This document shows, piece by piece, positions 30,537-63,878 of a DNA stretch of 64,000 nucleotides (its first letter is position 1; the number at the start of each line of letters is the position of its first letter). Below the pieces are notes generated by a model, which worked only from the letters and a program-made list of their open reading frames with translations, was not told the origin of the DNA and did no database searches. Source of the DNA: Octopus sinensis (taxonomy: Eukaryota); assembly GCF_006345805.1 (NCBI RefSeq), contig NC_042999.1, positions 74,958,001 through 75,022,000 on the forward strand. The letters run 5' to 3'. Made by a program: the position numbers and the translations under genes.

Positions 30537-30630
30537 ATGATGAAGATAAAGATATATCCTTGTCAGTCCTGTCATACCTATCTAATATTATTAATATTTG
30601 CAGCTTTAACTATATCTGGACATGCTCAAT
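30537..30630 (+). CDS. Exon 1: signal peptide MMKIKIYPCQSCHTYLILLIFAALTISGHAQ
   Basis: Hydrophobic core LILLIFAALTI with a G-H-A cleavage-like motif. Acceptor tttacag directly precedes the ATG; donor GTAAGT at 30631 (phase 1); in-frame upstream TGA at 30450-30452. Confidence 0.75.
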
Positions 30631-33600
30631 GTAAGTATAGATATTATACGTACAATACTTTTGTATTCAATAATGACTCATGCAAGATTACATATTTCTT
30701 ATTTAGTGAGCATTAGCATTGTTTGTTCATTTATACAAAAATATATACATACATATATAATACTTACATATACACACACACACACGCGCGCGCACACACA
30801 CACGCGCGCGCACACACACATATATAATTATTAAGGAATAATACTTCCGAGTACACAGGAAAAAGATATTCAAATTAGATGTATTAAAATGAACATCTCA
30901 CAATGTTTAATTCGTATATATAAAAGTAATTTTTGAGACAGAACCACCTTCAACTCAATCAACACTGAAAGATTTTATACCCGACCACTCCATAAAATGT
31001 TAAAAATTAAATCTTATACTAACTATATCTATTCTGAATCCTGTATTTTCCGTTTATAAGACTACACGTGTTTCATGAAAGTACGTCGGTATTGATTAGA
31101 TACAAGGTATCTAGTTTCAATACTTACTCAGGTCGACATACTCCCAATCTTCAGGTCTGGATTCCTCAACATATTTCACTATCCCTAACTCTTATATACT
31201 TCCATGATACTCTATATCTTCAATATAATCTTACTTAACATGTGCAAATGAATAGAAATACAAATAATAAATAAAAATAACTGAATATCAAAAATTTAAG
31301 GAGTAAAAATTTAAGGAGTAAAAATTTAAGGAATAAAAATTTAAGGAGTAAAAATTTAAGGAGTAAAAATTTAAGGAATATAAACTCAAGGAATAAACAT
31401 TTAAGGAAAAAAATTTAAAGAGAAAAAAATACGTGTAAAAATTACGATTAAAGGTTCCGAATAACGAATAAAGAATTGCGAATAAACAAATACGAAATAA
31501 AAATGAAATAATAATGAAACAACGATGAAATAATAATGTATTAAAAATAAGGACGAAAATAAACAAATGTTAACTTATCTTTTCTTTCCTCGGTGAAAAT
31601 TAGACAAAGCTACATCTTGCAAATCAGGTAAAATCTGCGTTTGATAATACCTATAGATAGGAGGTACCACAAATAAATGTCGGAAAGTCCTACTGGTGTT
31701 TCTATTCCTTTATATAGTACTGTCAGGGGAACAAGCCCCTTTTATCGTTTTTTAATTTATTCAATCCATGTATTATTGCAAACAACCAATCTAGAAAGTT
31801 ACTTCTTTAGACTCACAATTCGAATATTTTCCATCCCGTGTGCCTCCACTTGTTCTGTTTAGTCCATCATAGAAAGAATGGACTAAACAGAACAGGAAGA
31901 GACACACAAGACAGAAGAGTTGGTGAAGAGACCACAGCTATGTGACAAAAGACTTTCAGACAATAGACATAAGATAAAATAAAAACTATAACAAATGAGT
32001 GAAGAATGAATATATCGTAGGTGTGTTTATTTGGCAAAAGAAAGAATAAAAATGACAGTCCAGAAATATAACAATATATACACACACATATATACGTATG
32101 ATATTCACACACACACCCACCCACACACATGCGCGTGCACGCATGCACACATATGACTTATTCTTTTCTTCTTTCAAAGATGATGGAGATATTGCCTTGG
32201 ATTTCAGTGGCTTAGCTAAAATTTATTTTCGTGGTAAATGGACAGCTATTTGTGCGTCAAAAGGTTTTACAATTCAATCACGAGTGTTGTGTCGGAGTTT
32301 TGGTCAAAAGTAAGTAATACAATATTTCTTTACATATAGAATATGATGATAGATACATTTATCTAGTATTGAAAGATAATAACTGTAATTAAGCAGTCCC
32401 TTCAGGGTTAATATCATGATATTCAGTGTGCTAGACCAGTCATACATCATATACCTTTTCACCCACCCCTACAATGTGTGTCTTCTTCTCCTTGTCCTAC
32501 AATGAACTCCCACTATCCCATCTCCATCAATGAGCTCTCTCTTTTTCCTGCCCTAAATTAAGTGCTACTTCTCCCAGTCCTATTATGAATGCCCCTTCCC
32601 TCAGCATACATTGTGTGCCTTCTTTAACAATTTTCTCTCTAAATTCCTTTGGCCACCACCCTCTTCTTCTTATAGGGATAAATGAGTTGAAAGTTATATT
32701 CAACTTCTACACAAAAATATCTATGGCTTTATAATCAAGTATATCACAGCATAAATCTGTTATCTGCCAAATTTTAAATTCTTCATGCCAAATCCTTTGA
32801 CACATTGTAAGAGTACATAACGCTCTCGCCTTCCCAGCCCTACACCAACCCTGTTCTACACCCTCTTCTGTTCAAGAAGTGAAACTACCTGCACCCTTTA
32901 ATACACTATATTTTTTAGTGTACTCATAGCCAACTCTCATCCCACTAATAGCACCACCAAGCATGATTTCTGCAACTCTAACAAGCCACTCATCTACTCA
33001 TAATTTCCTTAGAGATCACCATGACAAAAGCTTTCCCCAGGTCAATGAAAGTCAAGTACAATGGTTTACTTTTGGCCACTTCTCCTGTGACTACCTCACT
33101 AGGAAGATGGCATCTATGGTACTCTTCCCAGACACAAAATCAAACCGTACCTCATCTAGTTTAATTTTATTCCTAATCAATTGAGCTATACCTCTTTCTG
33201 TAACTTTCATGACCTAGTCTGGCAGTTTGATACTTCTGTAGTTGTTTCTATCAAAGGCAACATCTTTACCCTTGCAGCAGCTATGATGCTATTATGCTAG
33301 TCTTTGGGAATGACACCTTCCTGGGAAACCTGATTAACTATAGGAGTGGTTAGGCCAAATCCTACTCTGCCAGATATTTTAAGCATCTCAGCAGTGATTC
33401 CTGATGGTCCAGAAACTTATCTAGTCTCTATATTTTTAATTGCTTTATGTATCATATTACTGTTAGCTCTGATGGTTGGTCCCTCAGTTGGTTCTATTTC
33501 AAAGACTCATTTTCCCATGCATTCTCCATATTTGGCAAGGTTTCATAGTGCTATTCCCATACATCTTTCTTCTCTGAATCACTAAATGCAACCATAGCAT

Positions 33601-35435
33601 TATCCATTTGCACATATTTCTCACCAGCAACATTTCTAATCTATCTGATCCACTGTTTAGCAATTCAGAACAGCTCACTGGGTGGTTTCATGTGAAATCA
33701 TATATCCTCTAAACAGAAGGTATGATTAAACAACCATTATACATGGTTGACTGGAAAATATAGCCAAGGTTCTTTTGACCTGAAGATGAAATATTAACAT
33801 GTTGCTAGGCTTTCAACTAGAATGAAAATCTGAGGAAAATATCCAGAGGTGAGAAATGTATAAGGGAAATGCAAAGATTTTCAGAGTTAAATCCTTGGTA
33901 AACTTGAGCAATTACATGGAAGTCAAAAATATTGCAACTTAAAATGATCTCTGCTCACAGATATGGGATTGAGGGAGAAGAAAAGAAAGTGAGAAAAAAG
34001 AATGAAAGGGAGAGGGCTATATAGAGACATGAAGAGAAGTAGCAATTTGGGAAAATACAGGCAAAAGGAGATTACGGAATAGATTTAAAAATGAAAAACT
34101 ATAAAAGTAGGAAGTTTAGAAATGTTATGAGGAAATAAAACCTATGAAAGGAAAATTCCAATCAGCTATGTGTATATATATATAAACACACACACACATG
34201 CAGGAAAAGTTCATAGTCCGACTAAGAAGGAGTAATGCTAGAGCTATGAAATCTTGCAATTTCAACATCCTTATTAATAACTGCATTGTTTCTTTCCAAA
34301 TAAACTGACACCTGACTGTTCAAAGAAAACTTCAAAAATAGCTAGCAGCAACTTCTCTTGAAAATGAATAAAATTTGGCATTGTGGTGTTATCAAGTACC
34401 AGCAAAAAAAAAAGGGTTTAGCCCTTAAAAAGCATTCATGCTGACATGGTTGGTACATTAGGGGATGATGCTCCAGCTTTATCAATAGTGCATAAATGGG
34501 TAGCTGGATTTAAGAGGAGAAATATCACCTGAAGTCTAAATGTCCTGCAGCTGCCACCACTGATAAAAAAAATTGATTGTGTTCACCATATGCTGATGGA
34601 TGATAGGTAACTGACTATAAATCAAATGGCTAATGCTATTAACATATCCTGTGAGAGAGTTGAGAATATTCTGCATAATGACTTTAGCATGATGAAGGTT
34701 TCTGCTTTGTAGGTGTCACATATTCTGACACCTGATCAAAAGTGCACCAGACTGAGCACTTCACAGGAAAACCTGACATTGTTTGACACAAATCCAGCTG
34801 ATTTCCTTGAATGTTTCCTAAGCCAGGATGTATGTTGGATCTGTCACTTTGAGCCAGAGACAAAGGGACAATCTATGCATTGGAAACACCACTCCTCATC
34901 TATTCCAAAGAAGGCCAAGATTATTTCAACTGCAGGAACGTTAATGGGGTCAGGTTTTTTGGGGGGATAAAAAAGGCATTGTGTTTATTGACTGTCTTCA
35001 AAAGGGACATGTCATCAATGGAGAGTACTATGTCAGCTTGTTGAAGCAGCTACAAAAGGCTATCAAGGGCAAATGCCCAAGAAAATTAACGAAAGGGGTC
35101 TTATTTCATCAGGACAATGCTCCAGCACACAAGTCCTTGCATTCAATGGCTTTGAACTGGTTGATCATTCTCCTTATTCTCCTGATTTGGTCTCATTTGT
35201 TCCCAACATAAAAAAACATTCAACTGGGAACCAATATCACAGTAATGATGATATCATATCTGCTGTTGATGACTTTTGGGGCAACAGGATGAAAGCTTCT
35301 TCACAAAGGGTTCTAACACTGCAGTGTTTGGATGATAAGGGACATTATGTTAAAAAATAAACTGCATTTGGTGACATTTCATGAGATTATCTTGATCAGT
35401 CTATGAACATTTCAGCCAATCTCTGAGTGTGTACT

Positions 35436-35466
<31 letters not shown>

Positions 35467-37439: not shown

Positions 37440-37488
<49 letters not shown>

Positions 37489-40400
37489 TGTGTGTGTATG
37501 CATGTGTGTGTGTGCATGTATGTTTGCGTGTCTGTGTTTGTCCCCCAACATCACTTGGCAACCGATGTTGGTGTTTTTATGTTACCGTAACTTAGCGGTT
37601 TGGCAAAAGACACCTATAGAATAAGTACTAGGCTTACAAAGAATAAGTTCTGGGGTCAATTTGCTCAACGAAAGGCGGTGCTCCATCATGGCTGCAGTCA
37701 AATGACTGAAACAAGTAAAAGAGTAAAAAGTAAAGGAGAGAGTAAAACTGAAATATATTCTTTTTGTATTCAATTTTCAGATTTTCAACTTATTTATTAG
37801 ATAGTTCAAATTTACCAATCTCAGTCGGTGATTTAACATGCAGAGGTGATGAAAACTCACTAGCAGCTTGCAATTATAATTTTGGTTCAACTAAGAGTTG
37901 TTCATATAGCAAGCTTTATGTTCGGTGCCAGGAAGACTGTAAGTACTAATATTTACTTCACTAAGATATCAATGTGTGTTATCTATCAAATAATCCTTAT
38001 ATTCTTTGCAAATCACAAGAAATTGTGTGGCTGATATTCCTTGGTAGTAAGCAGGGTACTGTTCTATTACAGTTAGCATTTATTACTTGAGTAATTGAAT
38101 TAAACACAGTAAGCCAACATACTCAATGATGTTTATTCTTGCATTTGTGAGTTAGACCTATTTCCAATAATTATTTTCTGTTATAAAGCATGGTCAGATG
38201 AGAAGGGAGGCAGTTGTGGTTTTTGCATGCCAATACAGACTGGTGAGACTGATATGGCCAATGCTCATCCTGAAAATCAGTAGGTCAGTAATATAGGTGG
38301 AAAGAAATCAAGGAGTATGAATGCTTGTGACAAAATGAGCTCTGCTGAAGGAACCCAAGAACCAGGTAGTGTATTAGACTTGTCTCTCTTAACCATGGCA
38401 CAGTACTGAGAGGATTTGTTAGATATATACTACTGAAAAACCATAGTGATTACTATTTTGGGAAATATCTGGTTATTGGCTTTAAGACCAAAATCAAATT
38501 CATCACCTTATTGATATGTTAATACATGTTAATGATGGAAATAATAATATATCATGTAATTAAGGAAAAATTGTATTTATTGATTGCTAGTTATGTGTTT
38601 AGATTATATAATTATTGTTACTGTTTTATCTATTAATAATTCCAATGAGATTAACAAGGTCAATTTAGTATCTTATCAGTATATGCTGGATTTTAGTGCC
38701 AGTATAATACAGTTGTTAATTCCTTTGAGCACCTCCTTCAGTTAACTAACATAACATTTACTAGATGAATTAGATACTTTCATGTATTTGTTCATAAAAT
38801 TCATTGAAACTACATTATTTTCAATTTCATGTTCCAGTAACTAAAGCATTTTGCCCATTTGATAACGACATTTGTGGAATGGTTAATGAAGGCACAGCAG
38901 CTTATAAATGGCAACGTGTTCATCCCTATACATCCAGACTGCCAGGACAATCAATACCCAAAAGTGATCACACGACTGAAAGTTATAAAGGTAATTAATC
39001 TCAGTTTCTTTGATCATCATCATCATCCTCATTTAATGTCTGTTGTTCATGCTGGCATGGGTTGGACTGTTTGACCAGGGCTGGTAAGCTGGAAAACTAC
39101 ACCAGACTCCAATCTGATTTGGCCTGGTTTTCTAAAGCTGGACACCCTTCCTAACACCAACCACTCTGAAAGCATAATGGGTGCTTTTATGTGCCACCAA
39201 CACGGGTACCATTTGCGTGACACCCATATTTGCCATGACTGCAATTTTACTCAGTTTCATGGGTCTTCTCAAGATGACATAATGCCAAAGGTCTCAGTCA
39301 TTGCTTCTGTGAGGTCCAACACTCAAAAGGAAATCAGCCACTTTGCCTCCATGATAAAACAATCATAGAGTAAAAAAAGAATCTGTATTTTGTGCTGTTG
39401 TTCTGCTTTTCTTTGAATCCTTAACACCAAATTTTAATTAGTATCTAATGATCTTTGATGATTGAACCTGAAACCTTTATTTTACTGCTTGGGCCCATTG
39501 TTCTTGCAACTGTTCTTTTGCTCTGAAGGTTAAATGTGTAGTTATCTTAAATACTTAAGAATTAGGCTTAATAAATACAGACATATTGGATAATGAATTT
39601 TTACCTACTTGTTGAGGCAAGTGAAATCAAAATCGAATCAAATTCAATGGCTGGCACCCGTGCCAGTGGAGAGCTAAGAGCACCATCTGAGCATGATCAT
39701 TGCCAGAGCAGCTGACTGGCTTCCATGCCGGTGGCATGTAAAAAGCACCATTCAAGCGTGATCGTTACCAGCGTCATCTTACTGGTATTTGTGCTGGTGG
39801 CACATGAAAAAACATTTTAGCGAGGTTGTTGCCAGTGCTGCTGGACTGGCTCCTGAGCAGGTGGCATGTAAAAAACACCATTTGAGCGTGGCCGTTGCCA
39901 GTACTGCCAGACTGGCCCTCATGCAGGTGGCATATAAAAGTACCCACTACACTCTTGGAGTGCTTGGCGTTAGGAAGGGCATCCAGCTGTAGAAACTCTG
40001 CCAGATCAGATTGGAGCCTGGTGCAGCCACCTGGTTCACCAGTCCTCAGTCAAATCGTCCAACCCATGCTAGCATGGAAATCGGACGTTAAACGATGATG
40101 ATGATGCTCTGAAAAAAAAAACACGAAAAGAAAAAAGCAGATGGGTTGTTCATGGCTACAAATGCCTTTGATCATAGATCTACTAGATTAGAGTTGATAT
40201 GAGACTAAACAACAATAAAAAAATGACTCATTAAAAAGGATGACAGATAGCAGAAATATTGTTGATGAGCTCAATAGAAACAAACTCAAACATAAACTTT
40301 TCTCTTTTGTATAATAATTTTGTATGAAGAAGAGGGAGGTCTGTGACTGAAGCTTTCCAGAACCCCTAGTAGTAGTAGTAGTAGTAGTAGAAGTGGTGGT

Positions 40401-41451
40401 GACAGGAGGAGGAGGAGGATAGTAGAACTATTAACAACCCATTTTTATTACTGATTAATAATTAAATTTCAAAGATATTTAACAATAAATTATTAGTTTA
40501 TATTTTTGAAACCCAGTTATTATTCACCTATTTTATATGTAGGACACAAATTAAATTAAAATCATATGAAGTTTGTTGATAATATTATACTAAACTTTAA
40601 GGCAGTGAGCTGACAAAATTGTCATATCAGGCAAAATGCTTAGAGGCATTTTGTCCATCTTTATGTTCTGAGTTCAAATTTCACCAAGGTTGAATTTGCC
40701 TTTCATCTTTTAGGGGTTGATAAAATAAGTGCCTGCTGAGCATGGGGTGGTGGGATTGGTGATGTAATTGAGTAATCATCTTACCCACTTCTCTGAAATA
40801 GCTGGCCTTGTGCCAAAGTTTGAAACCGGCATTATACTAAGATCTGCCACATTATATTCTCAAAAAGTAATTTTTTTTTATTATATCATTTTTACATGTT
40901 ATTGAATGCTGTATATTTGCTTTTTCAGGAAAATATATGCTTGCTTCTGCAACTGGTTTCCCTGGACAAAAAACAACTTTGAGAACAAAACCCACCAGTG
41001 GAAATGTTGGGAGTATCAGTTTCTACTATCACATGTTTGGAAGTGACATGGGAAGCCTAAATGTCTATATTCAAAGTCATAATTCTAGAAAAAAATCTAT
41101 TGGATCTATATCAGGCAATCAAGGCATTGGATGGAAATATCTGTGTCTTCCCGTGAATGAGGGATATAGGTAAGAAGATTTTGCTTTCAATAACTTTTAC
41201 TGGTTCATGATTGATTTTTCTGGCAATGTTGATGCCAAAGTTAGTTTGCGCAGCTTATTTGCTTTGACAGACCAACAGAAGCCACATAATAATGATGCAA
41301 CTTCATACCTCTCACCTTGTATACAATAAAAATATAACACACTTCTAATCTCCCATGAAATAATGATTTAACAATTCACCTCTGATCTCTTTTTATAATG
41401 ATGATACAAAAAACACCTCTAACCTACCTTGTTATATAAATAATAATAATA

Positions 41452-41523
<72 letters not shown>

Positions 41524-41729: not shown

Positions 41730-41793
<64 letters not shown>

Positions 41794-42269: not shown

Positions 42270-42353
<84 letters not shown>

Positions 42354-45300: not shown

Positions 45301-45569
45301 CAGTATTACCAGTAATTGTTGGAGCCCTGGGAACAGTGAGAAAAAATCTCGAGAAGTATTTGGAACAAATAGAGGCTGCAATAAAGGTGGAGCACTTGCA
45401 GAAAACAGCACTGCTTGGAACCACTCGAATAGTCTGGAAGATGCTCAAAAAATAAGAGGTGTTACCTTAGTTCACTGGTAGTGAACAGCTGACACCATAG
45501 TACATGTCCAGCGTTAGAAGCTGTGCAAAGACAATAATAATAATGACAATGATAATAATAATAATGATG

Positions 45570-45610
<41 letters not shown>

Positions 45611-49927: not shown

Positions 49928-50004
<77 letters not shown>

Positions 50005-50846: not shown

Positions 50847-50907
<61 letters not shown>

Positions 50908-53900
50908 GGGTTTCGAATTTTGCCACAAGGGCAGCAATTTGGGAGGAGAGGATGAGTCGATTACATCAAACCCCTCTCCAGTGTTCAACTGGTACTAATT
51001 TTATCAACCCCGAAGGGATGAAAGGCAAAGTCAACCTCAGTGGAACGCACGCACACACACACTTACACACATACATAAACAAATATGTATGTAAACATTT
51101 ATGCACATACAACACACAAACACTATAGACTGCATCAAAAAAAGAAAAAAATTAAATTAATGAAACAATATTTCCCCACTTGATTGTTGAGCAATCATCA
51201 ATGTAATGTTTCTGGTTAAAGCTACTTTTCAGAACATTTCTAACATAATAGAAATTGTCCAAAGTGTTCTTCTTTTTCAAGAAGTGATTTACCTGACATA
51301 TCATGCTGGTTGACTTATTGCATAGAATTTCCTTCATTTGTTTGAATATTTAAGTGTTTTCTCCATTTGTGGTTGAGATAATTAAATTTAAATACCACAT
51401 TAATGCTTTCATCATTATTGCAACTATAAATTTGAAGTTACAGTGAGAAGAAAAGAATCCTACCCAGGATTTTTTATGAACGGAGATAACACTGAAGGCT
51501 AAATTTCAGTCTTGTTTTTCATTTTGTTAACTCTAAGAAACTAGGATGTTTGTAAACATGATCAATTTATCATTAGCCAAATTTGACTTTAAAATCTTTA
51601 TAAGTAAAAAACAATATGTGATATATTTATTTAATGTTTTGTTAATTGTTTAGTAATACAGAAAGTAAGATTTGTTGAAATATCCCCTGTTGCAGTTATG
51701 TCCCTAACTATATACGTTTGTAATTTTAATGTATTTTAGAATATAGAAATATCAGAAATAGAAGAAATAGTGCTTTCCATCAATTTCTTTTGCTATTAAA
51801 TCTTTTCTTTTTATTTATTTATATTAAAGGAATCATGAAATCATATTTGAAGCTATCCAAGGAAATGGTTTTGACAGTGATATTGCCCTTGATGATGTCA
51901 CCTTATCAGAAAATAGCTGTTCAAGTAAGGGCAAAATATACCATAACATATTATAACATATCAGCAATTAGCTTTAGTAATTATGTTTAGGTGAGCATGT
52001 ACGCTTACATGCATATCTACTGCCTGTGTGTGAAAGAGAGGGAAGGAGTGTGTGTGTAAAATGTGTGTGTGTGTGTGTACATGTACACAAGTTTACTCCA
52101 TTCCAATTAGATTTATATTTTTGATGTCAACATTCACCTTACTCAGTAACAGTATAAGAAGAATAATGAAATGAAATGAAAGCTTGAACAATGTTCTCAT
52201 CAACTTCCTCTCTCTATGTTTTCAAATATAAAATTTCATAGATTATTTTACTGACATATATTGTATCCTACACACTGGTTTGTAAGTGTTTGGAAATTAT
52301 GGCTTGTTTCAAGATATCTTTCCTGAGTTTGCTGGATCGATGCCAGACATACGTACACCATACAGTATTCTATACAAGCCAATGAGAGAGCCACTATGTG
52401 GTCACTGGACTAACTACAAACAGCAACCAAATCTCTTTCAAATCACATTCTCCTGTCTAGAGAAAAAATGGTCATACTGGATAATGTGGTGCTATGTATT
52501 CCTAAATAATATGAGATGGTCATAGTTGGAATGTTTTTGGTCATAGATCTGCTTGATTCAGGCTGGCTTGGGGACTAAACAACAACAGCACCATAGAGTA
52601 AGATGCATATATGAAATGTTGCATGCACTACACATCTGCATGTTCTGTACCAAAGCTTGAAACTGGGAAATTTAGTGTTGTCAATGCAAGAACAGAAATC
52701 ATTTACTTAAATAAACAAATTTAGTCAATATGTATTACAATTGAATATACCAAACATTCAGTAATTTGCTCTGATTATTGTTGCATGAATCAGAGTTATA
52801 TTACCTCTTCACTAGTAATTAGTTTTTTTCTTGATATATGCATATGAGAAATAACATTTTGCTCACTGTTTTGCTTTGGTTAAAGGTGTATTTGTGGTCC
52901 TCTGAAAATATGCAGTGATAACTCCAGTATGAAATGAACAAAGTGTTTGATAGACTCAAACAACTTTGAAATTCTAGATTTGTATTATATCGTTTAGAGA
53001 TAAACTCAAAGTGGTTCCCAGCACTTTGAGGCAACACTCAAACCTTTAGCCATTAACTCTGTACAAAACAAATAAAAGCAGCCAGCAGTGAACTGCAAAT
53101 TCATTTAACTGCCCACTGTGTCCAGTGTCATTATAGTATGTCTCTGGTAACTGGATGAATTAACCAACCTTACAATCCTTTGGCTATAATTGTTTAAGAA
53201 AGGAACTATTTTTGTAAAATAGTGTGAAAAAATGTGCTTTAGAATATGAGTTATAGATTTGTTGAACACTTACTTGGAAATAATTAAATTCTTTAATCAA
53301 TTATTTTGCATTAACAGATCACTGGAATGCAAGTTGTGATTTTGAGAGTGGCACTTGTGGTTATGATATTGAAAACATGAATGATATACGCAGAGGTTGG
53401 AGACTTAGCCCAAATAATACAAATGGAATTTCTTCTCGTTCTGGTAATTGTTTTTGTTTATTTTATTATTGTTTCAAGTAAAATGATTTAAAATATTGAC
53501 ATTTCAAATAATATTAAAGGTAAAAAGGCATTTTATTTCTGTAACTACAAGTAACTTTTGGCTTCACCTAGCAGTGCAACATTGTAAGTATATAAGTTGT
53601 AAGTATTACAAGCACAGCACATATGTATGCCTCAGTCAAAACCCATCAGTTCATTGAGTGGGCCATATTTGTTATATGTGTGATGGGTATCTGCTGAAAA
53701 TAAGCATTATAATGAAATGACACTCATACCTGACAAGTATAATCACATGAGAACTCTACAAATGCTGTATTTATTCCATCTATCTGCAACCAGAGTTCAA
53801 ATGCTAAGAAGATCAACTTTATCTTTCATTCATTTGCAATCAGTTATGTTCCAGTTCAGTTCTGAGGTCACCTTCTCTCTCTCTCTCTTTCTCCCCCTCA

Positions 53901-56900: not shown

Positions 56901-59900
56901 CATCCATAAGAACTTGCTCTGCAAGGTGGAATGATCCTTTCAGCACAACTCCCTTGCCATTTTTTATGATAATGCATTTGCCATTTGGTCTATAAGGACT
57001 TACTGTAATATATTTCTCTAAACCATAAAAGTGTAATGGAGAGATACAATTGAATTAAATCAATGCCAGGAGATGAAAAACTAAGTATGCTATGATATCA
57101 TTTGAATTTGGAACATAATAAAATACTGCAGAATATTCAACTCTGTTAATTAGAAGTGAATGAGGGGAATCTAATTAGTTGAGCATTGGCCAGATAATAG
57201 TTAAACTTATGTTATTATAGATATTTTTCTAACTTATAAAAAAAATTTTTGTCTACTTAAATATTACTCAATTTATAATTTATTTGAATCTTAGCAAATA
57301 ACATACATTAGCATTAAATATTAAAGGAAATAATCAAAACCTCTTTGACTGTTTTACAGCTAACTACCTGCTATTTACTTCACGTTACAATTCAGAGATA
57401 AGACACTCTATAAAGTCACCTATGATTGATATTCCAAATGAAAGGATGAAACTTGAATTTCTCTATTATATGCCTGGGACTAAAGCTCAAGAACTACAAG
57501 TAAGATTTGTGGAAGATGAACTTAAACCATGGTTTTATAAAACACCATATTTCTGGCAAGATTCTGGAGACCATGGAACTGAGTGGCAATATGGTTGCAT
57601 GGATTTACCAAGTACACGTGGAAGAATTGTATTCACTGGTATTGCTGAAAATAGCTATTCAACCTTGGGTCTTGATGATTTAGTTATTGATAAAGGCAAC
57701 TGTCGAAGTAAGTAGAATTGTTTTACTCTCTTTGCAAGTGTTGAATGGGTTTTTTGGCTTTGCTTTCTTAAAGTGTTTTAATTCTGTTTCATCTCTTTTA
57801 TGAGAAACTTTATTTCTTATATTTTAATTAAATTAGATTACTTTTAGTTTTGTTTTTTAATCTTCATCTACTTTCACAGTTGGAAAGTCTTTGATTACAG
57901 ATCTGGTCATTTTATATTAAAACTGTTCTGTAATTTGAAAAAGTATAAAATATTAGTTGAATAAACGCAGAAAACTATGTGCATGTTATCTTTTCACCGT
58001 TTTTCTGATGGAAGCAGAATGTCAACTACCTTCCCTTTTACTATGTAAGTGTTACATAACAACACAAGATTATATATATCATAGGTATTGTGAATTGACA
58101 GAAACTTAATCTAATCATATAAGTATTTACTAGCATCTGTCAAGTGTTTGTAGAGAATGAATACATGATTAAGTTTATAATCTTTTGTACATTTCCCACT
58201 ACGTCCATGTGTTAGTATCATGTGACAGAATATTTTGCACCTAAACATGTTCACTCAACTGTGTCAGCCTTCTTTTTGGCTTTGTTAAATAAAGATTATG
58301 ACATTCTTGCATTTTCCGTGGTTATTAGTAATGCAAGTGAACTAAAATAACTATAAAAGCTATATCCAAAATCAGGATGCAGTTCTAGCTCATGAATAGT
58401 AGATTAAACAAAGAATATATTGAGTAAAACAAAAAACAAACCAACCAAAAATGATGAGATAAATGAGATGTCTCATATAAAAGGCAGCATTTCAATATTT
58501 ATTAAATATTTAAAAGTAGTGATGGTGGAGTGGCAGCAGCAGCAGTGATGGTGATTGTAGTTGTCTGCAAATATTTAATATGTACAGATAGATTTCCTAT
58601 CCAATTTCACTTAAATTGATGTTTCTGTTGCTTAGCTCTTAGTTAGGCTTAGCCAATTAGACTTATGATTAAGATGTTCAAGTGCCAGCAATTCCAATGT
58701 TTATTAAGACATAGTGTATGCAGAACACCATTATTCAAAATGTCTATTTTTGAAGATCAATAGTGTACTATTCTGGCAGGATGAGCAACCAAGTAGAGGA
58801 TCTCTCATTAGTTCACAATTGTTCTCTCTGATGTTGATTTTGTCTTTATCCTTTCAGTATCATTAAAATAAGTGCCAGTCAGATACTGGAGTCGATCTAA
58901 TAAATAGTCCTAGCTCCAGAATTTGTTGCCTTCTCCCTAAATTAAAAACTTTAGTTTTGTTATTTGAACAACTAACACCTTCATTTCATTTTGAGAACAT
59001 GTATCTCTTTAACATCACAATTGTCATATGTACCATTTATTTGTTTGGGGCTCTTTGATATAAATACATGATACTGTTTTTTCAAACACACAGCAAGAAA
59101 ATTTTAAGGAAGGAACTGTAATGTTTTTGAAAAATATTGCACATTGTTTCCTTATCATCATCGTTGTTACTGTTTTCATTGTCATCATGGCTGTTGTTGT
59201 TGGCAGCGGTGGTGGCAGCAGCGGCAGCAGTGATGGCAGTGGGATCATCATCATCATCGTCATCATCATCATCATCGTCATCATCATCATCATTATCATC
59301 ATCATCATCATCATCATCATTTAACATCTAATTTTTTCTACTGGCATAGGTTGGATGGTTTGACAGGAGCTGGTAAGTCAGAAGACAGTGCCAAGCTCTG
59401 TCTAATTTAACATGGCCTCTGTTGCTGGATGTCTCTGTTGCTGAATATATGGGGTGCATTTTATGTGGTACCAACAGCAGTGAGGTCACCAAATAACTTA
59501 TAAGACAAAACCCTACAAATGAGAGGAGAATAGTATCGAAGGAGGTGGCTTTGTGCCAGGAGATGAAAGTATGAACAAGAGGACAGAAATAGGTGTCTTG
59601 CAGTCAAGGAGATACATGGCTACATCAGTAGAACCAGCAGGAGAGAGATAGAGGAAAAAGTAGATGGTGCAGGTGTAATGCAGGGTGGGGTTGAACTCTC
59701 AAGTTACTAGAAGGTAAAGTGAAACTTAGGTTTACTGACATGCATATACACTGAACTCCAAAAGAAACACAAGACGTGAAATATGTTTTAATTTCATTAT
59801 GTCAGAGATAAATTTTGATAAATCTGATAAAGTCACTTTCTTGGATGTACTTTGAACACAGTCTAAGGGTCGTTGTCATGTGTTCTTGTAATGGGTGGAT

Positions 59901-62900
59901 CCAGCACATTGAGATTGTAGGGCGTCACATGTTCATTACTATGTATGCCCTCCCTGGCTGTTCAAAATGGCCATATACCATTAATCAGCAAACAGGGAAT
60001 CTCAATTTTGCAGCAGGTAATACTGGAAATGGATACTTTGTGTGAATATTTCTTGATGAGTATTCAACAAGCCAAGCCTAATAGAGTGTTTAAGTATTCT
60101 GGCTTGCTTAGCTATACAGAGCATACAGTGCCCACTCCTGTTGATGTAGAGATCTGGCAGTTCTAAGATCTTCCACTTGATATTATATGGGGTACCTTGA
60201 TCTTTGAGGTGACACACATGGCTAGAGATGTGAGGAAGTATCTTTCTGTGACCCTGAAGGATGACTGGTGGTTGTACAAGCATCCCTTCAAAGCTGCACT
60301 GGTTGATCTTATGTATTTACAGGCTTAGGTGTTGGCTGTGTTCACATTACCGGTGCATCTCTGGTTGGCTCTGGCCTTGGGGATGTTGTTGTCATTGGAT
60401 GGGCCAGCATGGTTTTCAGGCCCTAGGAAACACTTAAGAGTCCTCTCCAACTTGTGTCATCTTATATATCATTATTTTAAACAATATAGAATATGTTGTA
60501 TAATTTTCCTACTTAAAATTGTCTGAGTTACATTATATAATTGAAACACAACAGTAGCTTGAAACACAACTGAAGAAACTACAATTAAAAATCTACTTTC
60601 AGTTCTCTATTAATTTTATTCATATTTCATATGTGTGATCTTGTTCTTATGTTAGAAATCCATTTTACAAGAGTCATGTTTTTCTCTGCATCATTCATCC
60701 CCTCATCAACTCACCATACATTATCCTCAGAAAAGATAATTTTAAAGAAATTTACATGGAGAAATGAAATAAAGAAAAACAATCAATTTACTTATTTTAT
60801 TCATTGAATTCATATATGCAATTTAAAGAAAAATAAGTTTTTTGGTCAAACTTTATTTTTCCTCACAAACCACTGGAAAAAACTAACCATGACCACTCTC
60901 AAATACCACATTAGGCTGTGTGATCAAACGAAAAATGATAAAGATGTAGAGACTGGAAGAAGAAAGAGAAATGTAATGCAATTAGAAACCAATTTACTAA
61001 AATTTTTTGTTTGTAAAACAGTTAATTTTTCTGTTTCCCTATTTCAAATTATTGAATGTACTCATTTTATCATTAAGATGGGTAAGCTATTTTATGAAAA
61101 TCTTCAGTCAATAAAACAGTCAATATTTGTTGTTATAAGCAACTGTGAAATTAGAAAAAGAAGGTATGGAAATATTCCTAGTCATGAATAAAAATAATTC
61201 ATTAAAATTTATCCTTTATGGTTTTGAGTATGTATGAGGAAGATTTAGTGAAGATAGTGCATGGAAATGTTATGTTAATATTGTGGACAAAATAATTTAA
61301 AAAAAAATTCTTTGTCATTCCTCGTTTGCTGCAAATGATACTAACATATGCAATTCATCATCATCACCATCGTCATTGTTTAATGTCTGCTTTCCATGCT
61401 GGCATGGGTTGGACGGTTTGGCTGAGGACAGTCAAGCCAATAGGCTGCACCAGGCTCCAATCTGATCTGATGAGGTTTCTACAGCTGGATGCCGTTCCTA
61501 ACACCAACCCCTCCGAGAGTGCAATGGGTACTTTTTACATGCCACTGGCATGGGAGCCAGTCAGCAGGCACTAGCATCGACCACATTCGGATGGTGTATT
61601 TTACATGCCACCAGCATGGGAGCCAGTCAGGGGGCATTGGCATTGACTATGTTTGCATGGCGCTTTTTATGTTCCACTGGCACAGGAGCCAGTCAGGTGG
61701 CACTAGTATTAACCCATGTCTGAATAGTGCTAATTACATGCCACCAGCACAGGTGCCAGTCAGGTGGCACTAGCCAATACATGTATTTAAAAATAGGAAA
61801 GTTTCATATAGTTACTCTAGCTGCAGGACAAGTAGCTGAGCACTCCACAGATGTGTACTCTGCATGACACAGAATGTGACAAGGCTAGCCCTTTCAACTA
61901 CAGGTACAACTCATTTTTGCCAGCTGGATGAACTGGAGCAATGTAAAATAAAGTGTCTCACTCAAGAATACAATGCACCACCAAGAAAATTGAACTCATG
62001 ACTTTATTTCATGAGCCAATTACCCTAACCATTAAGTCACAGACCTTCTACCTACTAGAAACAGCTGCCAATTCTCCTGAAAATCATTTAGAAAGACTAT
62101 CTCTATGATATAAATGTAGCCTTGACTTAGAACATTGTTTTTAGAAAAGTTATTTATGGAAAAGTCAATTCAAGTTATTTTGTATAATATGGAATAAAAT
62201 ATGTTGTAGAATGTGAAATAAATTATCTTTAAGATAAAAGTTTCAGTTATATAATATTTAAAAAAATTACTTTGCAAAGACAAATGAAATTTCAATAATT
62301 CCAGTTAAACAGTATCTAATGTAGCATCTATTTTTATGAAAATGAAAATAAAGGTAAAGTTAATGAGTTGCAAATTCTGGAAATTGTAGTCGATCAACAT
62401 CAATGGAAATTGTAGCTGTGATACTAGTACTGGTGGCACGTAAGAGAACCATCCGAACGTGGCCATTGCCAGCGCTGCCCCGACTGGCTTCTGTGCCAGT
62501 GGCACGTAAAAAGCACCATCCAATCGTGGCCGTTTGCCAGCCTCGTCTGGCACCTGTGCAGGTGGCACGTAAAGAGCACCCACTACACTCACGGAGTGGT
62601 TGGCATTAGAAAGGGCATCCAGCTGTAGAAACACTGCCAGATCAGACTGGGCCTGGCGCAGCCTTCTGGCTTCCCAGACCCCAGTTGAACCGTCCAACCC
62701 ATGCTAGCATGGAAAATGGACGTTAAACGATGATGATGATGATGATGATATAGTAAATATAGGTGCAGGAGTGGCTGTGTGGTAAGTAGCTTGTTCTCGG
62801 TTCAGTCCCACTGCATGGCACCTTGGGCAAGTATCTTCTACTATAGCCTTAGGCTGACAAAAACCTTGTGAGAGAATTTGATATACGGAAACTGAAAGAA

Positions 62901-63178
62901 GCCCGTCATACATATATATATATATATATGTGTTTCTTTATTGCCCACAAGGGGCTAAACATAGAGGGGACAAACAAGGACAGACAAACGGATTAAGTCG
63001 ATTACATCGACCCCAGTGCGTAACTGGTACTTAATTTATCGACCCCGAAAGGATGAAAGGCAAAGTCGACCTTGGCGGAATTTGAACTCAGAATGCAACA
63101 ACAGACGCAATACCGCTAAGCATTTCGCCCGGTGTGCTAATGTTTCTGCCAGCTCGCCGCCTTATATATATACATATG

Positions 63179-63211
<33 letters not shown>

Positions 63212-63878
63212 CTGTGTTTGTTCCCCCCAACATCGCTTGACAGTCGGTGCTGGTGTGTTTACATCCCTGTAACTTAGTGGTTCAGCAAAAAAGACCGATA
63301 GAATAAGTACTAGGCTTACAAAGAATAAGTCCTGGGGTCGATTTGCTTGACTAAAGGTGGTGCTCCAGCATGGCTGCAGTCAAATGACTGAAACAAGTAA
63401 AAGACAGAGTAGGATTTTAAATGGGCATACAAGCAGCAAAATCAGTACAGCAAAAGATTAACACTCTTATAGTGTTTATTTACATCTCTCTTCATTTCAG
63501 TTCAAATTACATCTGGTAAAAAATCATATTTCCTCTCTCTGGTGTCAAGAAAAAGAGTACCATTCTAACATTTAAATTTGTAACCTACCAATGATGTTTA
63601 CATTATTTACATTTGACGGATATTTGTTTTCATCTTGTTTGTTGTTAACACAATGTTTTGGCTGATATACCCTCCAGCTTTCATCATACGAATGTTATTG
63701 TTATTGTTTTATATTTTAGCTGGGATCGCAAATCATGTATGCACGTTTAATAATCCACTGCTCTGTCAATATGAAATTAGTTGTATGAACCCTCAGGAAT
63801 ATATATGGAGGACGGGGAAGGGAGCAACTCCATCAAGTGAAACTGGGCCTAGCACTGATTATTCAAAAAAAACCAATG
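30537..63878 (+). CDS. Multi-exon gene for a secreted or cell-surface protein: signal peptide + SRCR + at least 3 MAM domains (3' end beyond window). Exons 30537-30630, 32180-32309, 37781-37938, 38838-38990, 40929-41169, 51830-51924, 53318-53443, 57360-57707, 63720-63878
   Basis: Nine segments, each bounded by AG/GT, join in one open frame with intron phases 1,2,1,1,2,1,1,1 (1504 nt, ~501 codons). Translation shows SRCR motifs (GKWTAIC, VLCRSFG, LTCRGDENSLAAC) and MAM motifs (CxF..CG, W.R, DHT, F-Y-YHMFG, GNQG..W, DIALDDV). Confidence 0.9.
31290..31400 (+). repeat. 15-bp minisatellite (AAAATTTAAGGAGTA)n, ~6 near-perfect plus degenerate units
   Basis: Direct reading; explains the YSLNF-repeat ORF. 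Confidence 0.9.
32180..32309 (+). CDS. Exon 2: SRCR domain N-half (DGDIALDFSGLAKIYFRGKWTAICASKGFTIQSRVLCRSFGQ)
   Basis: Polypyrimidine tract plus AG at 32178-79; donor GTAAGT at 32310; matches the SRCR G-x-W-x-x-(V/I)-C and V-x-C-R-x-x-G motifs. Confidence 0.85.
32950..33430 (-). mobile_element. Old RT remnant of the RTE-type family (intron 2)
   Basis: Aligns by eye to 47560-47900 (aaaagctttc, gcatc..tggtact.ttccc). Confidence 0.65.
34203..35416 (+). mobile_element. Mariner-type DNA transposon, decayed
   Basis: Fragments WICHFEPETKGQSMHWKH, INGEYY, VLFHQDNAPAH, HSPYSPDL; imperfect TIRs at ~34203-34228 and ~35389-35416. Confidence 0.85.
35625..36040 (+). mobile_element. SINE family A copy
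   Basis: Same bipartite structure as 6668-7050. Confidence 0.85.
36122..36993 (-). mobile_element. Tc1/mariner (maT-like) transposon, internally deleted
   Basis: TIRs cagggtgctcaggcaaaa versus revcomp caaggtgatctggctaaa, each flanked by TA (36120-21 and 36994-95); KTKFPQTIMVFGCVSSEGD and YVWQQDLAPCHT. Confidence 0.85.
37270..37740 (+). mobile_element. SINE family A copy ending ~40 nt upstream of exon 3
   Basis: Same bipartite structure. Confidence 0.85.
37781..37938 (+). CDS. Exon 3: SRCR domain C-half (FSTYLLDSSNLPISVGDLTCRGDENSLAACNYNFGSTKSCSYSKLYVRCQED)
   Basis: ttttcag acceptor; phase 2 matches exon 2; GTAAGT donor at 37939; four SRCR cysteines including C-x-G-x-E-x-S-L-x-x-C. Confidence 0.88.
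38838..38990 (+). CDS. Exon 4: MAM1 N-terminus (TKAFCPFDNDICGMVNEGTAAYKWQRV...PKSDHTTESYK)
   Basis: ttccag acceptor, GTAATT donor; C-x-F...C-G, W-x-R and DHT motifs typical of MAM. Confidence 0.88.
39012..40107. mobile_element. Two 3'-end fragments of the RTE-type family in opposite orientation (39012-39350 minus; 39640-40107 plus)
   Basis: Share catgctagcatgg, ggatgcccttcctaacgcc and the (GAT)n tail with 45611-45900. Confidence 0.8.
40929..41169 (+). CDS. Exon 5: MAM1 core (KYMLASATG...SISFYYHMFGSDMGSLNVYI...GNQGIGWKYLCLPVNEGY)
   Basis: tttttcag acceptor, GTAAG donor at 41170; FYYHMFG..MG.L.V and GNQG..W are MAM hallmarks. Confidence 0.92.
43200..45610 (+). mobile_element. R4/Dong-clade family A, long copy with RT core deleted; may extend 5' to ~42850
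   Basis: PWWKRRI, EELKQHLVAK, FWSDIW, WKAPGLD, NYSPISCL, then a jump to the thumb region; intact ORF 44706-45455 (CCHC + KPDI..IDIACP RLE); (AAT)n tail 45533-45610. Confidence 0.9.
45611..48374 (-). mobile_element. Young RTE-type LINE, 5'-truncated (no APE), RT with inserted PHD finger, tandem-repeat 3' UTR, (GAT)n tail
   Basis: ORFs 46936-48374 and 46418-46935: NYRGIKLL, QFGFVPGKSTTDAIF, FVDMEKAFDRV, GVHQGSVLSPLLF, LYADDL, then CSIC..CTQC..H..C..CGRC. Confidence 0.95.
48386..48712 (+). mobile_element. Very short 5'-truncated R4/Dong-clade element, family D
   Basis: LQEVQKIVLTGTSHVLRRALSM* is homologous to the family B C-terminus; distinct 3' UTR; (AAT)n on both sides. Confidence 0.8.
48713..49246 (+). 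mobile_element. Uncharacterised AAT-tailed element (copy 2)
   Basis: Collinear with 15550-16116. Confidence 0.75.
49260..51045 (-). mobile_element. Cluster of about five SINE family C copies interleaved with (AAT)n arrays
   Basis: Copies at ~49260-49460, 49735-49930, 50050-50185, 50570-50815 and 50910-51045, all minus strand. Confidence 0.8.
51830..51924 (+). CDS. Exon 6: MAM1 C-terminus (NHEIIFEAIQGNGFDSDIALDDVTLSENSCS)
   Basis: Not in the correct frame in the ORF track; found by searching for the DIALDD motif. Phase 2 in and phase 1 out fit both neighbours; GTAAG donor at 51925. Confidence 0.88.
53318..53443 (+). CDS. Exon 7: MAM2 N-terminus (HWNASCDFESGTCGYDIENMNDIRRGWRLSPNNTNGISSRS)
   Basis: ttaacag acceptor, GTAATT donor; the CDFE..TCGY..W motif. 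Confidence 0.85.
54950..55800 (+). mobile_element. Highly decayed LINE RT remnant (CR1/jockey-like)
   Basis: HQY..., ..FDINKTFECLVW resembles the D..KAFD.VW RT motif. Confidence 0.35.
56430..56900 (-). mobile_element. Possible decayed Penelope RT remnant
   Basis: ICLLHNTF..LWQHCTDDV..MG..TPS..PNCLY resembles the PLE L..N.F..Y.Q..G.AMG..SP..ANLY motif. Confidence 0.35.
57360..57707 (+). CDS. Exon 8: MAM2 remainder (NYLLFTSRY...KLEFLYYMPG...GDHGTEWQYGCMDLP...GLDDLVIDKGNCR)
   Basis: ttttacag acceptor, GTAAGT donor at 57708; LEFLYYM, G..G.EW and LDDL..C motifs. Confidence 0.9.
59980..60500 (-). mobile_element. Penelope-type GIY-YIG C-terminal remnant
   Basis: YNIKWKILE..Y..SGHCMLC..RIL..LLN..EI..H..LL.N matches the PLE C-terminal CxxC motif. 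Confidence 0.6.
61355..61775 (-). mobile_element. RTE-type 3'-end fragment with a 66-bp tandem module
   Basis: (CAT)n then ggttggacgg..cagctggatg; units start at ~61537, 61603, 61669 and 61736. Confidence 0.8.
62420..62750 (+). mobile_element. RTE-type 3'-end fragment
   Basis: gggcatccagctgtagaaac..catgctagcatggaaaatggacgttaaacgatgatg. Confidence 0.85.
62760..63400 (+). mobile_element. SINE family A with a near-intact SINE family C (62930-63165, minus) nested in its internal microsatellite
   Basis: A head 62760-62912, (TA)n, C copy, (TA)(TG)n, A tail 63210-63400. Confidence 0.85.
63720..63878 (+). CDS. Exon 9: MAM3 N-terminus (GIANHVCTFNNPLLCQYEISCMNPQEYIWRTGKGATPSSETGPSTDYSKKTN)
   Basis: ttttag acceptor, GTAAGT donor at 63879; CTF...C, W...G.TPS..TGP..D motif typical of MAM. 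Confidence 0.88.

What the first reader, a model, noticed from the sequence alone, without database searches (positions are those of the whole stretch)
30537..63878. Hidden SRCR-(MAM)n secreted protein gene, largely invisible to the ORF track
Seen: nine phase-compatible exons give signal peptide, one 6-Cys SRCR (lacking C1 and C4, split over two exons) and MAM1-MAM2-MAM3, with no LDLa modules between MAMs. Established: 6-Cys two-exon SRCRs are group A; SRCRs mediate pattern recognition and adhesion, and MAMs mediate adhesion and oligomerisation. I cannot assign it to a named gene (not MALRD1-like in architecture, and no protease domain so far). Inference: a lineage-specific extracellular recognition or matrix protein (mucus, skin, sucker, egg coat or immunity), possibly one of a family.
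Basis: partly seen in the sequence, partly recalled or inferred. Interest (0 to 1): 0.75.

Follow-up and report, generated by a model that had tools for sequence, protein, structure and literature searches.

The report
Front end of octopus mosaic-protease-family gene
The nine exons are real and encode the secreted SRCR-plus-MAM front end of an octopus gene, but complete relatives of this gene carry on into a trypsin-like protease, so it is most likely the cut-off start of a large secreted protease (one relative is found in octopus skin mucus) rather than a new kind of recognition protein.

Summary
Nine + strand exons (30537-63878), all with AG/GT signals, splice into a 501-codon open frame: signal peptide, one six-cysteine SRCR, MAM1, MAM2 and the start of MAM3. 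Pfam scores both domains above their cut-offs. All nine junctions match, in position and phase, the RefSeq gene of an Octopus bimaculoides paralogue. dN/dS against that paralogue is 0.56 (0.43-0.73).

The gene runs off the window. Its full-length octopod relatives (Argonauta 1995 aa, O. bimaculoides 1293 aa, O. sinensis 1392 aa) share the same N-terminus. They continue into more MAMs, LDLa modules, further SRCRs and a C-terminal trypsin-like protease, closest to enteropeptidase. "No LDLa, no protease" is therefore probably a window-edge effect.

The window gene groups (100% bootstrap) with O. bimaculoides XP_052822574 and a 1987-aa O. vulgaris protein found by mass spectrometry in skin mucus, each about 70% identical. 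So the family and mucus guesses are supported at family level.

The N-terminal SRCR has lost five of six residues of the conserved cation/ligand site, which argues against classical SRCR recognition.

Verdict: an ordinary new member of an automatically annotated, functionally uncharacterised family. Whether this copy keeps the protease end cannot be seen here.

The parts
30537..30630 (+). Exon 1: start codon and signal peptide (MMKIKIYPCQSCHTYLILLIFAALTISGHAQ), donor phase 1. An alternative in-frame ATG lies at 30501.
   Evidence: Hydrophobic core at residues 14-26 (Kyte-Doolittle up to 3.13) followed by G-H-A|Q. The N-terminus is homologous to the annotated N-termini of P0186, P0189 and P0041. 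The junction matches the P0186 gene. The upstream ATG is seen.
32180..32309 (+). Exon 2: first half of the SRCR (to ...CRSFGQ), donor phase 2.
   Evidence: Pfam SRCR. 130 nt, the same length, column and phase as exon 2 of the P0186 gene.
37781..37938 (+). Exon 3: second half of the SRCR (C5-C8), donor phase 1.
38838..38990 (+). Exon 4: MAM1, first part (FCPFDNDICG...SDHTTESYK).
   Evidence: Pfam MAM residues 133-290; tblastn with P0001 74.6% identity; junctions conserved.
40929..41169 (+). Exon 5: MAM1, middle part, donor phase 2.
   Evidence: tblastn with P0001 75.6% identity, E 5e-36; junction conserved.
51830..51924 (+). Exon 6: MAM1, last part (…FEAIQGNGFDSDIALDDVTLSENSCS).
   Evidence: 95 nt as in the P0186 gene; 96.9% identical to O. 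vulgaris A0AA36ANS5.
53318..53443 (+). Exon 7: MAM2, first part.
57360..57707 (+). Exon 8: MAM2, main part.
   Evidence: tblastn with P0001 E 1e-49; local MAM HMM residues 296-451; junction conserved.
63720..63878 (+). Exon 9: linker and first ~47 residues of MAM3. It ends at a GTAAGT donor (phase 1) 122 nt before the window ends, so the gene continues beyond the window.
   Evidence: 159 nt as in the P0186 gene, where the next exon follows 214 bp later; local MAM HMM positions 2-43.

Best explanation
The window holds the first nine coding exons of an octopod gene from a small, fast-evolving family of very large secreted mosaic proteins. Complete members read: signal peptide, one degenerate six-Cys SRCR, four to eight MAM domains (the later ones separated by LDLa modules), then LDLa-SRCR-LDLa-LDLa-SRCR and a C-terminal trypsin-like serine protease. 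The protease end is closest to the LDLa-SRCR-protease block of enteropeptidase. The gene is cut by the window edge after the first exon of MAM3. Most likely the full product is an enteropeptidase-like protease of up to ~2000 aa, secreted into epithelial mucus. In that model the SRCR-MAM array seen here is the non-catalytic 'heavy chain' that oligomerises the protein or tethers it to mucus or substrates, and the distal domain does the cleavage. Shown: the exon model, the domains, family membership, the architecture of relatives, and the presence of a close relative in skin mucus. Inferred: secretion of this copy, its missing 3' half, its tissue, and any catalytic activity.
For: Exon model and open frame. 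Pfam SRCR and MAM above cut-off. All nine junctions identical in column and phase to the P0186 gene in L001. dN/dS 0.56, bootstrap 0.43-0.73, never >=1. Colinear relatives with the same N-terminus carry LDLa and Trypsin: P0041 Argonauta 1995 aa, P0045/P0186 O. bimaculoides, P0189 O. sinensis, P0057. The window gene forms a 100%-bootstrap clade with P0001 and O. vulgaris A0AA36ANS5. A0AA36ANS5 is 1987 aa, was identified by 13 unique peptides in skin mucus, is listed under SRCR, ConA-like and LDL-receptor-like InterPro classes, and has a peptide (FDYDMWR) matching the late MAM that follows the LDLa modules in protease-bearing relatives (PMC11431876, PMC10138644). Enteropeptidase is the top solved-structure match for the C-terminal block (7wqx_A, E 8e-49) and among the top matches for MAM1. 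No transmembrane-grade hydrophobic stretch apart from the signal peptide.
Against: The 3' half of this particular gene is outside the window, so LDLa and protease exons are not seen. One of the two closest relatives, P0001, is annotated as only SRCR-MAMx4 (832 aa), so protease-less copies may exist. A trypsin domain in the 1987-aa O. vulgaris protein is inferred from size and colinearity, not observed; peptidase S1 is not among the listed InterPro terms. No expression or peptide evidence exists for this copy: the one mucus peptide covering a diagnostic position (SIGSISGNQGTGWK) differs from the window sequence (…GIGWK). Family proteases are atypical (R|HGHN or R|YGQK instead of R|IVGG at the activation site; one member lacks the catalytic His and Ser), so 'protease' may not always mean active enzyme.
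Confidence: 0.68

Rival explanations
1. One reading: a stand-alone secreted SRCR-(MAM)n protein with no LDLa and no protease, acting as an adhesion, recognition or matrix component. It would be a paralogue that lost, or never uses, the catalytic 3' half.
For: Nothing but SP, SRCR and MAM is visible in the window. The O. bimaculoides relative P0001 is modelled as SRCR-MAMx4, 832 aa, with no LDLa or trypsin. MAM-only secreted proteins such as MAMDC2 exist and hit at 31-35% identity.
Against: P0001 ends with 13 unrelated residues (CKIQNIFILNSNS) immediately after the position where Argonauta P0041 continues into the next domain, as expected of a model that reads into an intron. Every other complete relative has the protease end. 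The other closest relative is 1987 aa with LDLa. The SRCR lacks the canonical ligand site.
Confidence: 0.22
2. A decaying or truncated duplicate (pseudogene or gene fragment) in a tandem family. The 5' exons are still intact, but the copy is no longer expressed as a full protein.
For: The family is duplicated and evolves fast, and identity to relatives is mosaic, suggesting recombination between copies. The introns are full of transposons. There is no expression evidence for this copy, and no product of it was seen in the protein searches.
Against: 501 codons without a stop or frameshift, all 17 splice signals canonical, all cysteines conserved, and dN/dS significantly below 1. The protein searches appear to list only proteins up to ~1.7x the query length, so the absence of a long product means little.
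Confidence: 0.08
3. An orthologue of vertebrate MALRD1/MALRD2, as the automated names of its relatives suggest.
For: [quoted passage not shown] Later MAMs of full-length relatives are separated by LDLa modules.
Against: No LDLa between MAM1, MAM2 and MAM3. An N-terminal SRCR and a C-terminal trypsin domain are present in relatives and no TM segment was found. 'MALRD'-named proteins outside octopods match at only 24-29% identity, and over MAM repeats alone.
Confidence: 0.02

Closest known systems
Octopod SRCR-MAM-LDLa-trypsin family: O. bimaculoides LOC106867184 (XP_014767469, P0186) and XP_052822574 (P0001); O. sinensis P0189; O. vulgaris OCTVUL_1B003028 / A0AA36ANS5 (O. sinensis LOC115209054, A0A6P7S478); Argonauta hians GAB1606841 (P0041)
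   Same: Same signal peptide, the same degenerate six-Cys SRCR, and MAM1-MAM3 colinear. Identity is 71% (P0001, A0AA36ANS5), 50-56% (P0186, P0189) and 42% (Argonauta). Intron positions and phases are identical to the P0186 gene.
   Different: It is a distinct copy: its identity to the nearest members (~70%) is below the 85.6% seen between O. bimaculoides and O. sinensis orthologues in this family. Its 3' half is unseen. These relatives carry only automated names and none has been studied functionally.
Enteropeptidase (TMPRSS15)
   Same: It is a characterised protease that combines MAM, LDLa, SRCR and a trypsin domain. It is the best solved-structure match to the family's LDLa-SRCR-protease block (7wqx_A, E 8e-49) and a top match to the window's MAM1 (E 4e-13). 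The non-catalytic heavy chain plus catalytic light chain logic is the working model here.
   Different: Enteropeptidase is a type II membrane protein with SEA and CUB domains and a single MAM. This family has a cleavable signal peptide, an N-terminal SRCR, four to eight MAMs, no SEA or CUB detected, and a non-canonical activation-site sequence.
MALRD1 / MALRD2 (source of the automated names)
   Same: Many MAM domains; in full-length relatives the later MAMs alternate with LDLa modules.
   Different: No LDLa between the first three MAMs. SRCR at the N-terminus, a trypsin domain at the C-terminus of relatives, and no TM segment. Only 24-29% identity.
MAMDC2 (secreted protein made of MAM repeats; architecture from general knowledge)
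   Same: A secreted protein built of consecutive MAM domains. Fish MAMDC2a hits at 31-35% identity over about a third of the model.
   Different: No SRCR, and no LDLa or protease end. The similarity is at the level of a single MAM domain.
Pattern-recognition SRCR proteins (DMBT1/SALSA, MARCO, CD163, Mac-2BP)
   Same: SRCR fold with the six core cysteines; the group A pattern as in MARCO and Mac-2BP.
   Different: Five of the six residues of the dual cation-binding ligand site (D1019, D1020, D1058, N1081, E1086 of SALSA SRCR8) are replaced (A, S, G, S, gap). D1019A or D1020A alone abolish SALSA ligand binding (PMC7043408).

Membership tests
SRCR domain, group A type | ~100-residue domain matching the SRCR profile above the curated threshold | tested here: met
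   PF00530 40.1 bits against a cut-off of 26.1, residues 40-125; solved SRCRs hit down to E 2e-16.
SRCR domain, group A type | Six cysteines (C2, C3, C5-C8), lacking C1 and C4 of group B | tested here: met
   Six Cys in conserved columns. The C1 position is Phe and the C4 position is Gln. Definition from PMC10855680.
SRCR domain, group A type | Domain encoded by more than one exon (established knowledge: group A split, group B single exon) | tested here: met
   Phase-2 intron after ...SFGQ (32309|37781), conserved in the P0186 gene.
SRCR canonical cation-dependent ligand binding (mechanism, not fold) | Acidic cluster equivalent to SALSA D1019, D1020, D1058, D1059, N1081, E1086 | tested here: not met
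   The window has A, S, G, D, S, gap. All close octopod relatives have also lost it, while family member P0057 keeps all six (PMC7043408).
MAM domain proteins | MAM profile matches above the curated threshold | tested here: met
   PF00629 165.7 bits against a cut-off of 26.4. Local HMM: 132-293, 296-451 and 455-501 (partial).
MALRD1/2 | LDLa module between successive MAM domains | tested here: not met
   No PF00057 hit. No LDLa-like motif in six frames of the window. MAM1-2-3 abut directly, as in P0001 and P0186.
MALRD1/2 | C-terminal EGF-like region and transmembrane anchor (from general knowledge) | not testable with these tools
   The 3' end is outside the window. Full-length relatives end in a trypsin domain with no TM-grade stretch.
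Octopod SRCR-MAM-LDLa-trypsin mosaic protease family | Homologous signal peptide, SRCR and MAM1-3, colinear with members | tested here: met
   42-72% identity over the whole region; clade with P0001 and A0AA36ANS5 in 100% of 300 bootstraps.
Octopod SRCR-MAM-LDLa-trypsin mosaic protease family | Shared intron positions and phases | tested here: met
   9 of 9 junctions fall in the same alignment column and phase as the P0186 gene in L001; three exon lengths are identical.
Octopod SRCR-MAM-LDLa-trypsin mosaic protease family | C-terminal LDLa-SRCR-trypsin block with a His/Asp/Ser triad | not testable with these tools
   It lies beyond position 64000. Present in P0041, P0186 and P0189; the triad is broken in P0057.
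Enteropeptidase / type II transmembrane serine proteases | N-terminal signal anchor followed by a SEA domain | tested here: not met
   The N-terminus is a short cleavable-type signal peptide followed directly by SRCR. No SEA or CUB in the Pfam scans of the model or relatives.

The most novel reading that the evidence does not exclude
This copy and O. bimaculoides P0001 might be protease-less SRCR-MAM-only derivatives of the mosaic-protease family. They would be secreted into mucus as non-catalytic binders or decoys. The exon-by-exon mosaic of identity (47% to 97% against the O. vulgaris relative) might then be the trace of gene conversion and diversifying selection in a tandem host-defence cluster specific to octopods.
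Probability: 0.2. Interest if true: 0.45.

Novelty: new member of a known kind. Interest (0 to 1): 0.25.

Why it matters
The value is modest. It adds a copy to a lineage-restricted, rapidly evolving family of giant secreted SRCR-MAM-LDLa-trypsin proteins. One member is a quantifiable component of Octopus vulgaris skin mucus, and its level differs between aquarium-maintained and senescent animals. It shows that the automated names 'MALRD1/2-like' are misleading, because these proteins are enteropeptidase-like mosaic proteases. It also illustrates how a window edge can turn the heavy chain of a protease into an apparent 'recognition protein'. No long-standing question is opened by this single partial gene.

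Tried and rejected
- The word-indexed homologue searches returned only proteins up to ~850 aa for a 501-aa query, and up to ~1540 aa for a 909-aa query. I infer a length limit. I therefore dropped my early conclusion that no closer protein exists and that the gene is unannotated.
- MALRD1 orthology was rejected on architecture and identity.
- DMBT1-like Lingula proteins (SRCR+MAM+chitin-binding+C-lectin) are a different architecture.
- I tried to name the source organism by exact look-up of two intact transposon ORFs. Nothing was on record.
- Genomic context of P0189 and P0045 is not indexed because they are shorter isoforms. The P0001 locus is too long for DNA to be returned.
- Tissue expression of the O. 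bimaculoides paralogue from the SRCR survey: only the ID list is held (Obi001), not the values.
- Literature searches for SRCR+MAM in cephalopods, or for this family in the Argonauta eggcase work, found nothing.
- The first bootstrap routine gave nonsensical supports and was replaced by direct split counting.
- Structure prediction was not run. The spliced model is not admissible, and the Pfam and PDB sequence matches already settle the folds.
- tRNA origin of the SINE-like repeats: none detected.
Full report
WHAT IS IN THE SEQUENCE. The window is AT-rich (GC about 0.31-0.39) and repeat-laden, with two GC-rich islands that are transposons. Stop-to-stop frames on the + strand between 30.4 and 64.0 kb contain nine pieces with SRCR- or MAM-like sequence. 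Each has a pyrimidine-rich AG acceptor and a GTAAG/GTAAT donor in a compatible phase. Spliced as 30537-30630, 32180-32309, 37781-37938, 38838-38990, 40929-41169, 51830-51924, 53318-53443, 57360-57707 and 63720-63878, they give 1504 nt and a 501-codon frame with no stop.

Pfam scores MAM at 165.7 bits (cut-off 26.4) and SRCR at 40.1 bits (cut-off 26.1), and finds no LDLa or protease domain. A local MAM profile places MAM1 at residues 132-293, MAM2 at 296-451 and the first ~47 residues of MAM3 at 455-501. The N-terminus has a hydrophobic core (residues 14-26, Kyte-Doolittle up to 3.13) followed by G-H-A|Q, and there is no other TM-grade stretch. A regular-expression scan of all six frames finds no LDLa-like motif anywhere in the window. 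No repeat overlaps an exon, and there is no second copy of the gene in the window.

INDEPENDENT SUPPORT FOR THE EXON MODEL. The model aligns end to end, across all eight internal junctions, with O. bimaculoides XP_052822574 (P0001; 69% identity, E 1e-260). tblastn with P0001 finds only these nine blocks, in order.

I recovered the genomic locus of a more distant O. bimaculoides paralogue, LOC106867184 (P0186; locus L001, CM046603.1), and mapped its exons exactly. All nine junctions of the window model fall in the same alignment column and the same phase (1,2,1,1,2,1,1,1,1) as in that RefSeq gene, and three exons have identical lengths of 130, 95 and 159 nt.

Nei-Gojobori dN/dS between the two coding sequences over 490 codons is 0.56 (dN 0.34, dS 0.61). 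The bootstrap 95% interval is 0.43-0.73, with no replicate at or above 1. The exons are therefore real coding sequence under purifying but relaxed constraint.

Three small corrections apply. MAM3 is only begun in the window. An in-frame ATG at 30501 is an alternative start: the O. vulgaris relative is annotated from the equivalent Met, while P0186, P0189 and P0041 start like 30537. Seven of the nine exons are in fact partly visible in the ATG-ORF list.

WHAT THE GENE BELONGS TO. The exhaustive representative search with P0001 found 4629 relatives, almost all generic MAM-repeat proteins. A few align colinearly from the SRCR onward:
- Argonauta hians GAB1606841 (P0041, 1995 aa);
- a transcript-derived protein, P0057 (1974 aa);
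- O. bimaculoides LOC106867184 (P0045/P0186, 1245/1293 aa).

A search with the Argonauta C-terminal half added O. sinensis P0189 (1392 aa). Pfam and local profiles show that all of them continue, after the SRCR-MAM array, into LDLa modules (some between the later MAMs), one or two further SRCRs and a C-terminal trypsin domain. Argonauta and the O. bimaculoides and O. sinensis proteins keep the His and Ser catalytic motifs. P0057 has LTHPKC and VDDGGP, so it is a pseudoprotease.

The best solved-structure match for the LDLa-SRCR-protease block is enteropeptidase (7wqx_A, E 8e-49, aligned over all three modules). The enteropeptidase heavy-chain MAM is also among the best matches for the window's MAM1. 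The next-best full-length database hits to that block are matriptase and TMPRSS7 at 28-30% identity. The family is thus a secreted, enteropeptidase-like mosaic protease with a much expanded SRCR-MAM front end. Its RefSeq and UniProt names ('MALRD1/2-like') are automated.

WHERE THE WINDOW GENE SITS. Over the region the window covers, identities are:
- 71% to P0001;
- 71-72% to O. vulgaris A0AA36ANS5;
- 56% to P0186 and 50% to P0189;
- 42% to Argonauta;
- 31% to P0057.

The window gene, P0001 and A0AA36ANS5 form a clade in 100% of 300 bootstrap replicates, and the clade is unresolved inside. The O. bimaculoides-O. sinensis orthologue pair in this family is 85.6% identical, so ~70% indicates separate paralogous lineages rather than simple orthologues. 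Identity to the O. vulgaris protein is strikingly mosaic: 96.9% in exon 6 and 91.5% in exon 8, but 47% in exon 3 and 51% in exon 7. I cannot explain this without DNA from that species; gene conversion between tandem copies is the obvious candidate. The source species of the window was not identified. The near-identical exons point to the O. vulgaris/O. sinensis lineage.

EVIDENCE FROM THE LITERATURE. Two O. vulgaris skin-mucus proteomes list proteins with this automated name (PMC10138644, PMC11431876). Searching their supplements for peptides predicted from the model led to OctVul6B003028P1 (UniProt A0AA36ANS5, gene OCTVUL_1B003028). It is a 'Master Protein' of 1987 aa and 224.9 kDa, identified by 13 unique peptides. 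The ~400 residues stored in the supplement show the same SP-SRCR-MAM1-MAM2 layout.

Its O. sinensis counterpart, A0A6P7S478, is listed under the InterPro classes SRCR, ConA-like and LDL-receptor-like, and was 2.8-fold higher in aquarium-maintained than in senescent animals. A de novo transcript ORF of 1989 aa matches it. One of its peptides, GCPGPFDCDFQNGICK, is identical to the MAM3/MAM4 junction of P0001. Another, FDYDMWR, matches the FDVDxWR segment of the late MAM that follows LDLa modules in the protease-bearing relatives.

The mucus peptide SIGSISGNQGTGWK differs from the window's SIGSISGNQGIGWK, so the window gene itself is not what was detected.

The gene leaves the window 122 nt after exon 9. 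In the P0186 gene the next exon lies 214 bp after the equivalent donor. All complete relatives, and by size and LDLa content the closest O. vulgaris relative, carry the LDLa-SRCR-protease end.

The only short relative, P0001 (832 aa), ends after ...HNETCK with 13 unrelated residues, right where Argonauta continues with ...NGTCK-LGLTHRVC. That is what a gene model running into an intron looks like. 'No LDLa between MAMs' is true for MAM1-3 in every member but not for the later MAMs. I therefore rate it about two to one that this copy is also the front end of a protease of up to ~2000 aa, and about one in five that it is a genuinely protease-less derivative.

HOW IT PROBABLY WORKS. Shown: a secretion-type N-terminus, an SRCR fold and consecutive MAM domains. 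Inferred by analogy with enteropeptidase: the SRCR-MAM array is a non-catalytic heavy chain that positions or oligomerises the protein in the extracellular or mucus layer, and the distal trypsin domain performs limited proteolysis.

The SRCR is unlikely to recognise ligands in the classical way. SALSA/DMBT1 SRCR8 uses a dual cation site (D1019, D1020, D1058, D1059, N1081, E1086), and D1019A or D1020A abolish all ligand binding (PMC7043408). At those six positions the window has A, S, G, D, S and a gap. All close octopod relatives have also lost the cluster, while P0057 keeps it. The six cysteines are invariant, so the fold is kept, probably as a structural or protein-protein module.

The family proteases are themselves unusual. 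They have R|HGHN or R|YGQK instead of R|IVGG at the activation site, and Gly193 is replaced by Val in the Octopus members (numbering from general knowledge of chymotrypsin-fold proteases). Catalytic competence needs to be tested.

NOVELTY AND VERDICT. This is a real gene and the domain reading is correct. It is a further member of a family already present in public annotation, under misleading automated names, and without functional study. I could not establish whether this particular copy is annotated, because the homologue search tool appears to return only proteins up to about 1.7 times the query length. Interest is low to moderate. The useful outcomes are the corrected family identity (enteropeptidase-like mosaic protease, not MALRD1), the link to skin mucus, the degenerate SRCR, and the warning about the window edge.

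Noticed in passing
window 18508-23756 (minus strand): A young LTR retrotransposon about 7 kb upstream of the gene. It has 413-bp direct repeats (18508-18920 and 23344-23756) at 98.3% identity. These flank open gag-like (DUF7041, 22239-23057), RT+RNaseH (20395-22110) and integrase (19333-20163) frames. GC is 0.46-0.50 against ~0.35 background.
   Followed up: partly
window 46421-48447 (minus strand), inside intron 5: A non-LTR retroelement with an open 503-codon frame carrying RVT_1 and a PHD finger, plus an adjoining 180-codon open frame. It forms a GC-rich island (0.487). The exact product is not on record in public assemblies.
   Followed up: partly
window 44694-45452 (+), 3732-4562 (-), 14924-15298 (+); also 97-1251 vs 44427-45571: A repeated ~250-codon open frame with no Pfam match, present in at least three copies. 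Window 97-1251 and 44427-45571 are 86% identical in DNA. It is probably the 3' ORF of a retroelement family.
   Followed up: partly
window 34945-35208 (+), intron 2: A frameshifted remnant of a mariner-type DNA transposon: Pfam Transposase_1, 38.3 bits against a cut-off of 24.
   Followed up: yes
window ~8750-8985, 39010-39220, 39710-40106, 45603-46334, 61344-61773, 62419-62749: A SINE-like interspersed repeat of 180-400 bp, 72-88% identical between copies, in both orientations and mostly in introns of the gene. No tRNA-like sequence was detected by ARAGORN.
   Followed up: partly
window 30486-30536: Immediately 5' of the ATG at 30537 lies a 51-nt interval bounded by AAAG|GTAAGT and TTTACAG|. 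It contains the alternative in-frame ATG at 30501. So either the start codon or a tiny 5' intron or acceptor is ambiguous.
   Followed up: partly
exons 3, 6, 7, 8 (window 37781-37938, 51830-51924, 53318-53443, 57360-57707) versus O. vulgaris A0AA36ANS5: Exon-by-exon mosaic identity to the O. vulgaris relative: 47% and 51% in exons 3 and 7, but 97% and 92% in exons 6 and 8. This suggests gene conversion between paralogues or exon-specific diversifying selection.
   Followed up: partly
relatives P0057 (residues 1787-1792, 1918-1923), P0041 (around 1770-1948), P0186 (around 1056-1246): Within the family, one member has lost the catalytic His and Ser (LTHPKC, VDDGGP). The Argonauta and Octopus members have R|HGHN or R|YGQK where trypsin-like zymogens have R|IVGG. 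The Octopus members have VDSGGP instead of GDSGGP.
   Followed up: partly
O. bimaculoides CM046603.1 (168 Mb): L001 and the P0001 locus: At least three family loci or isoforms (P0001, P0045/P0186, P0210) lie on the same O. bimaculoides chromosome. The P0001 gene model spans ~106 kb for only 832 codons.
   Followed up: no
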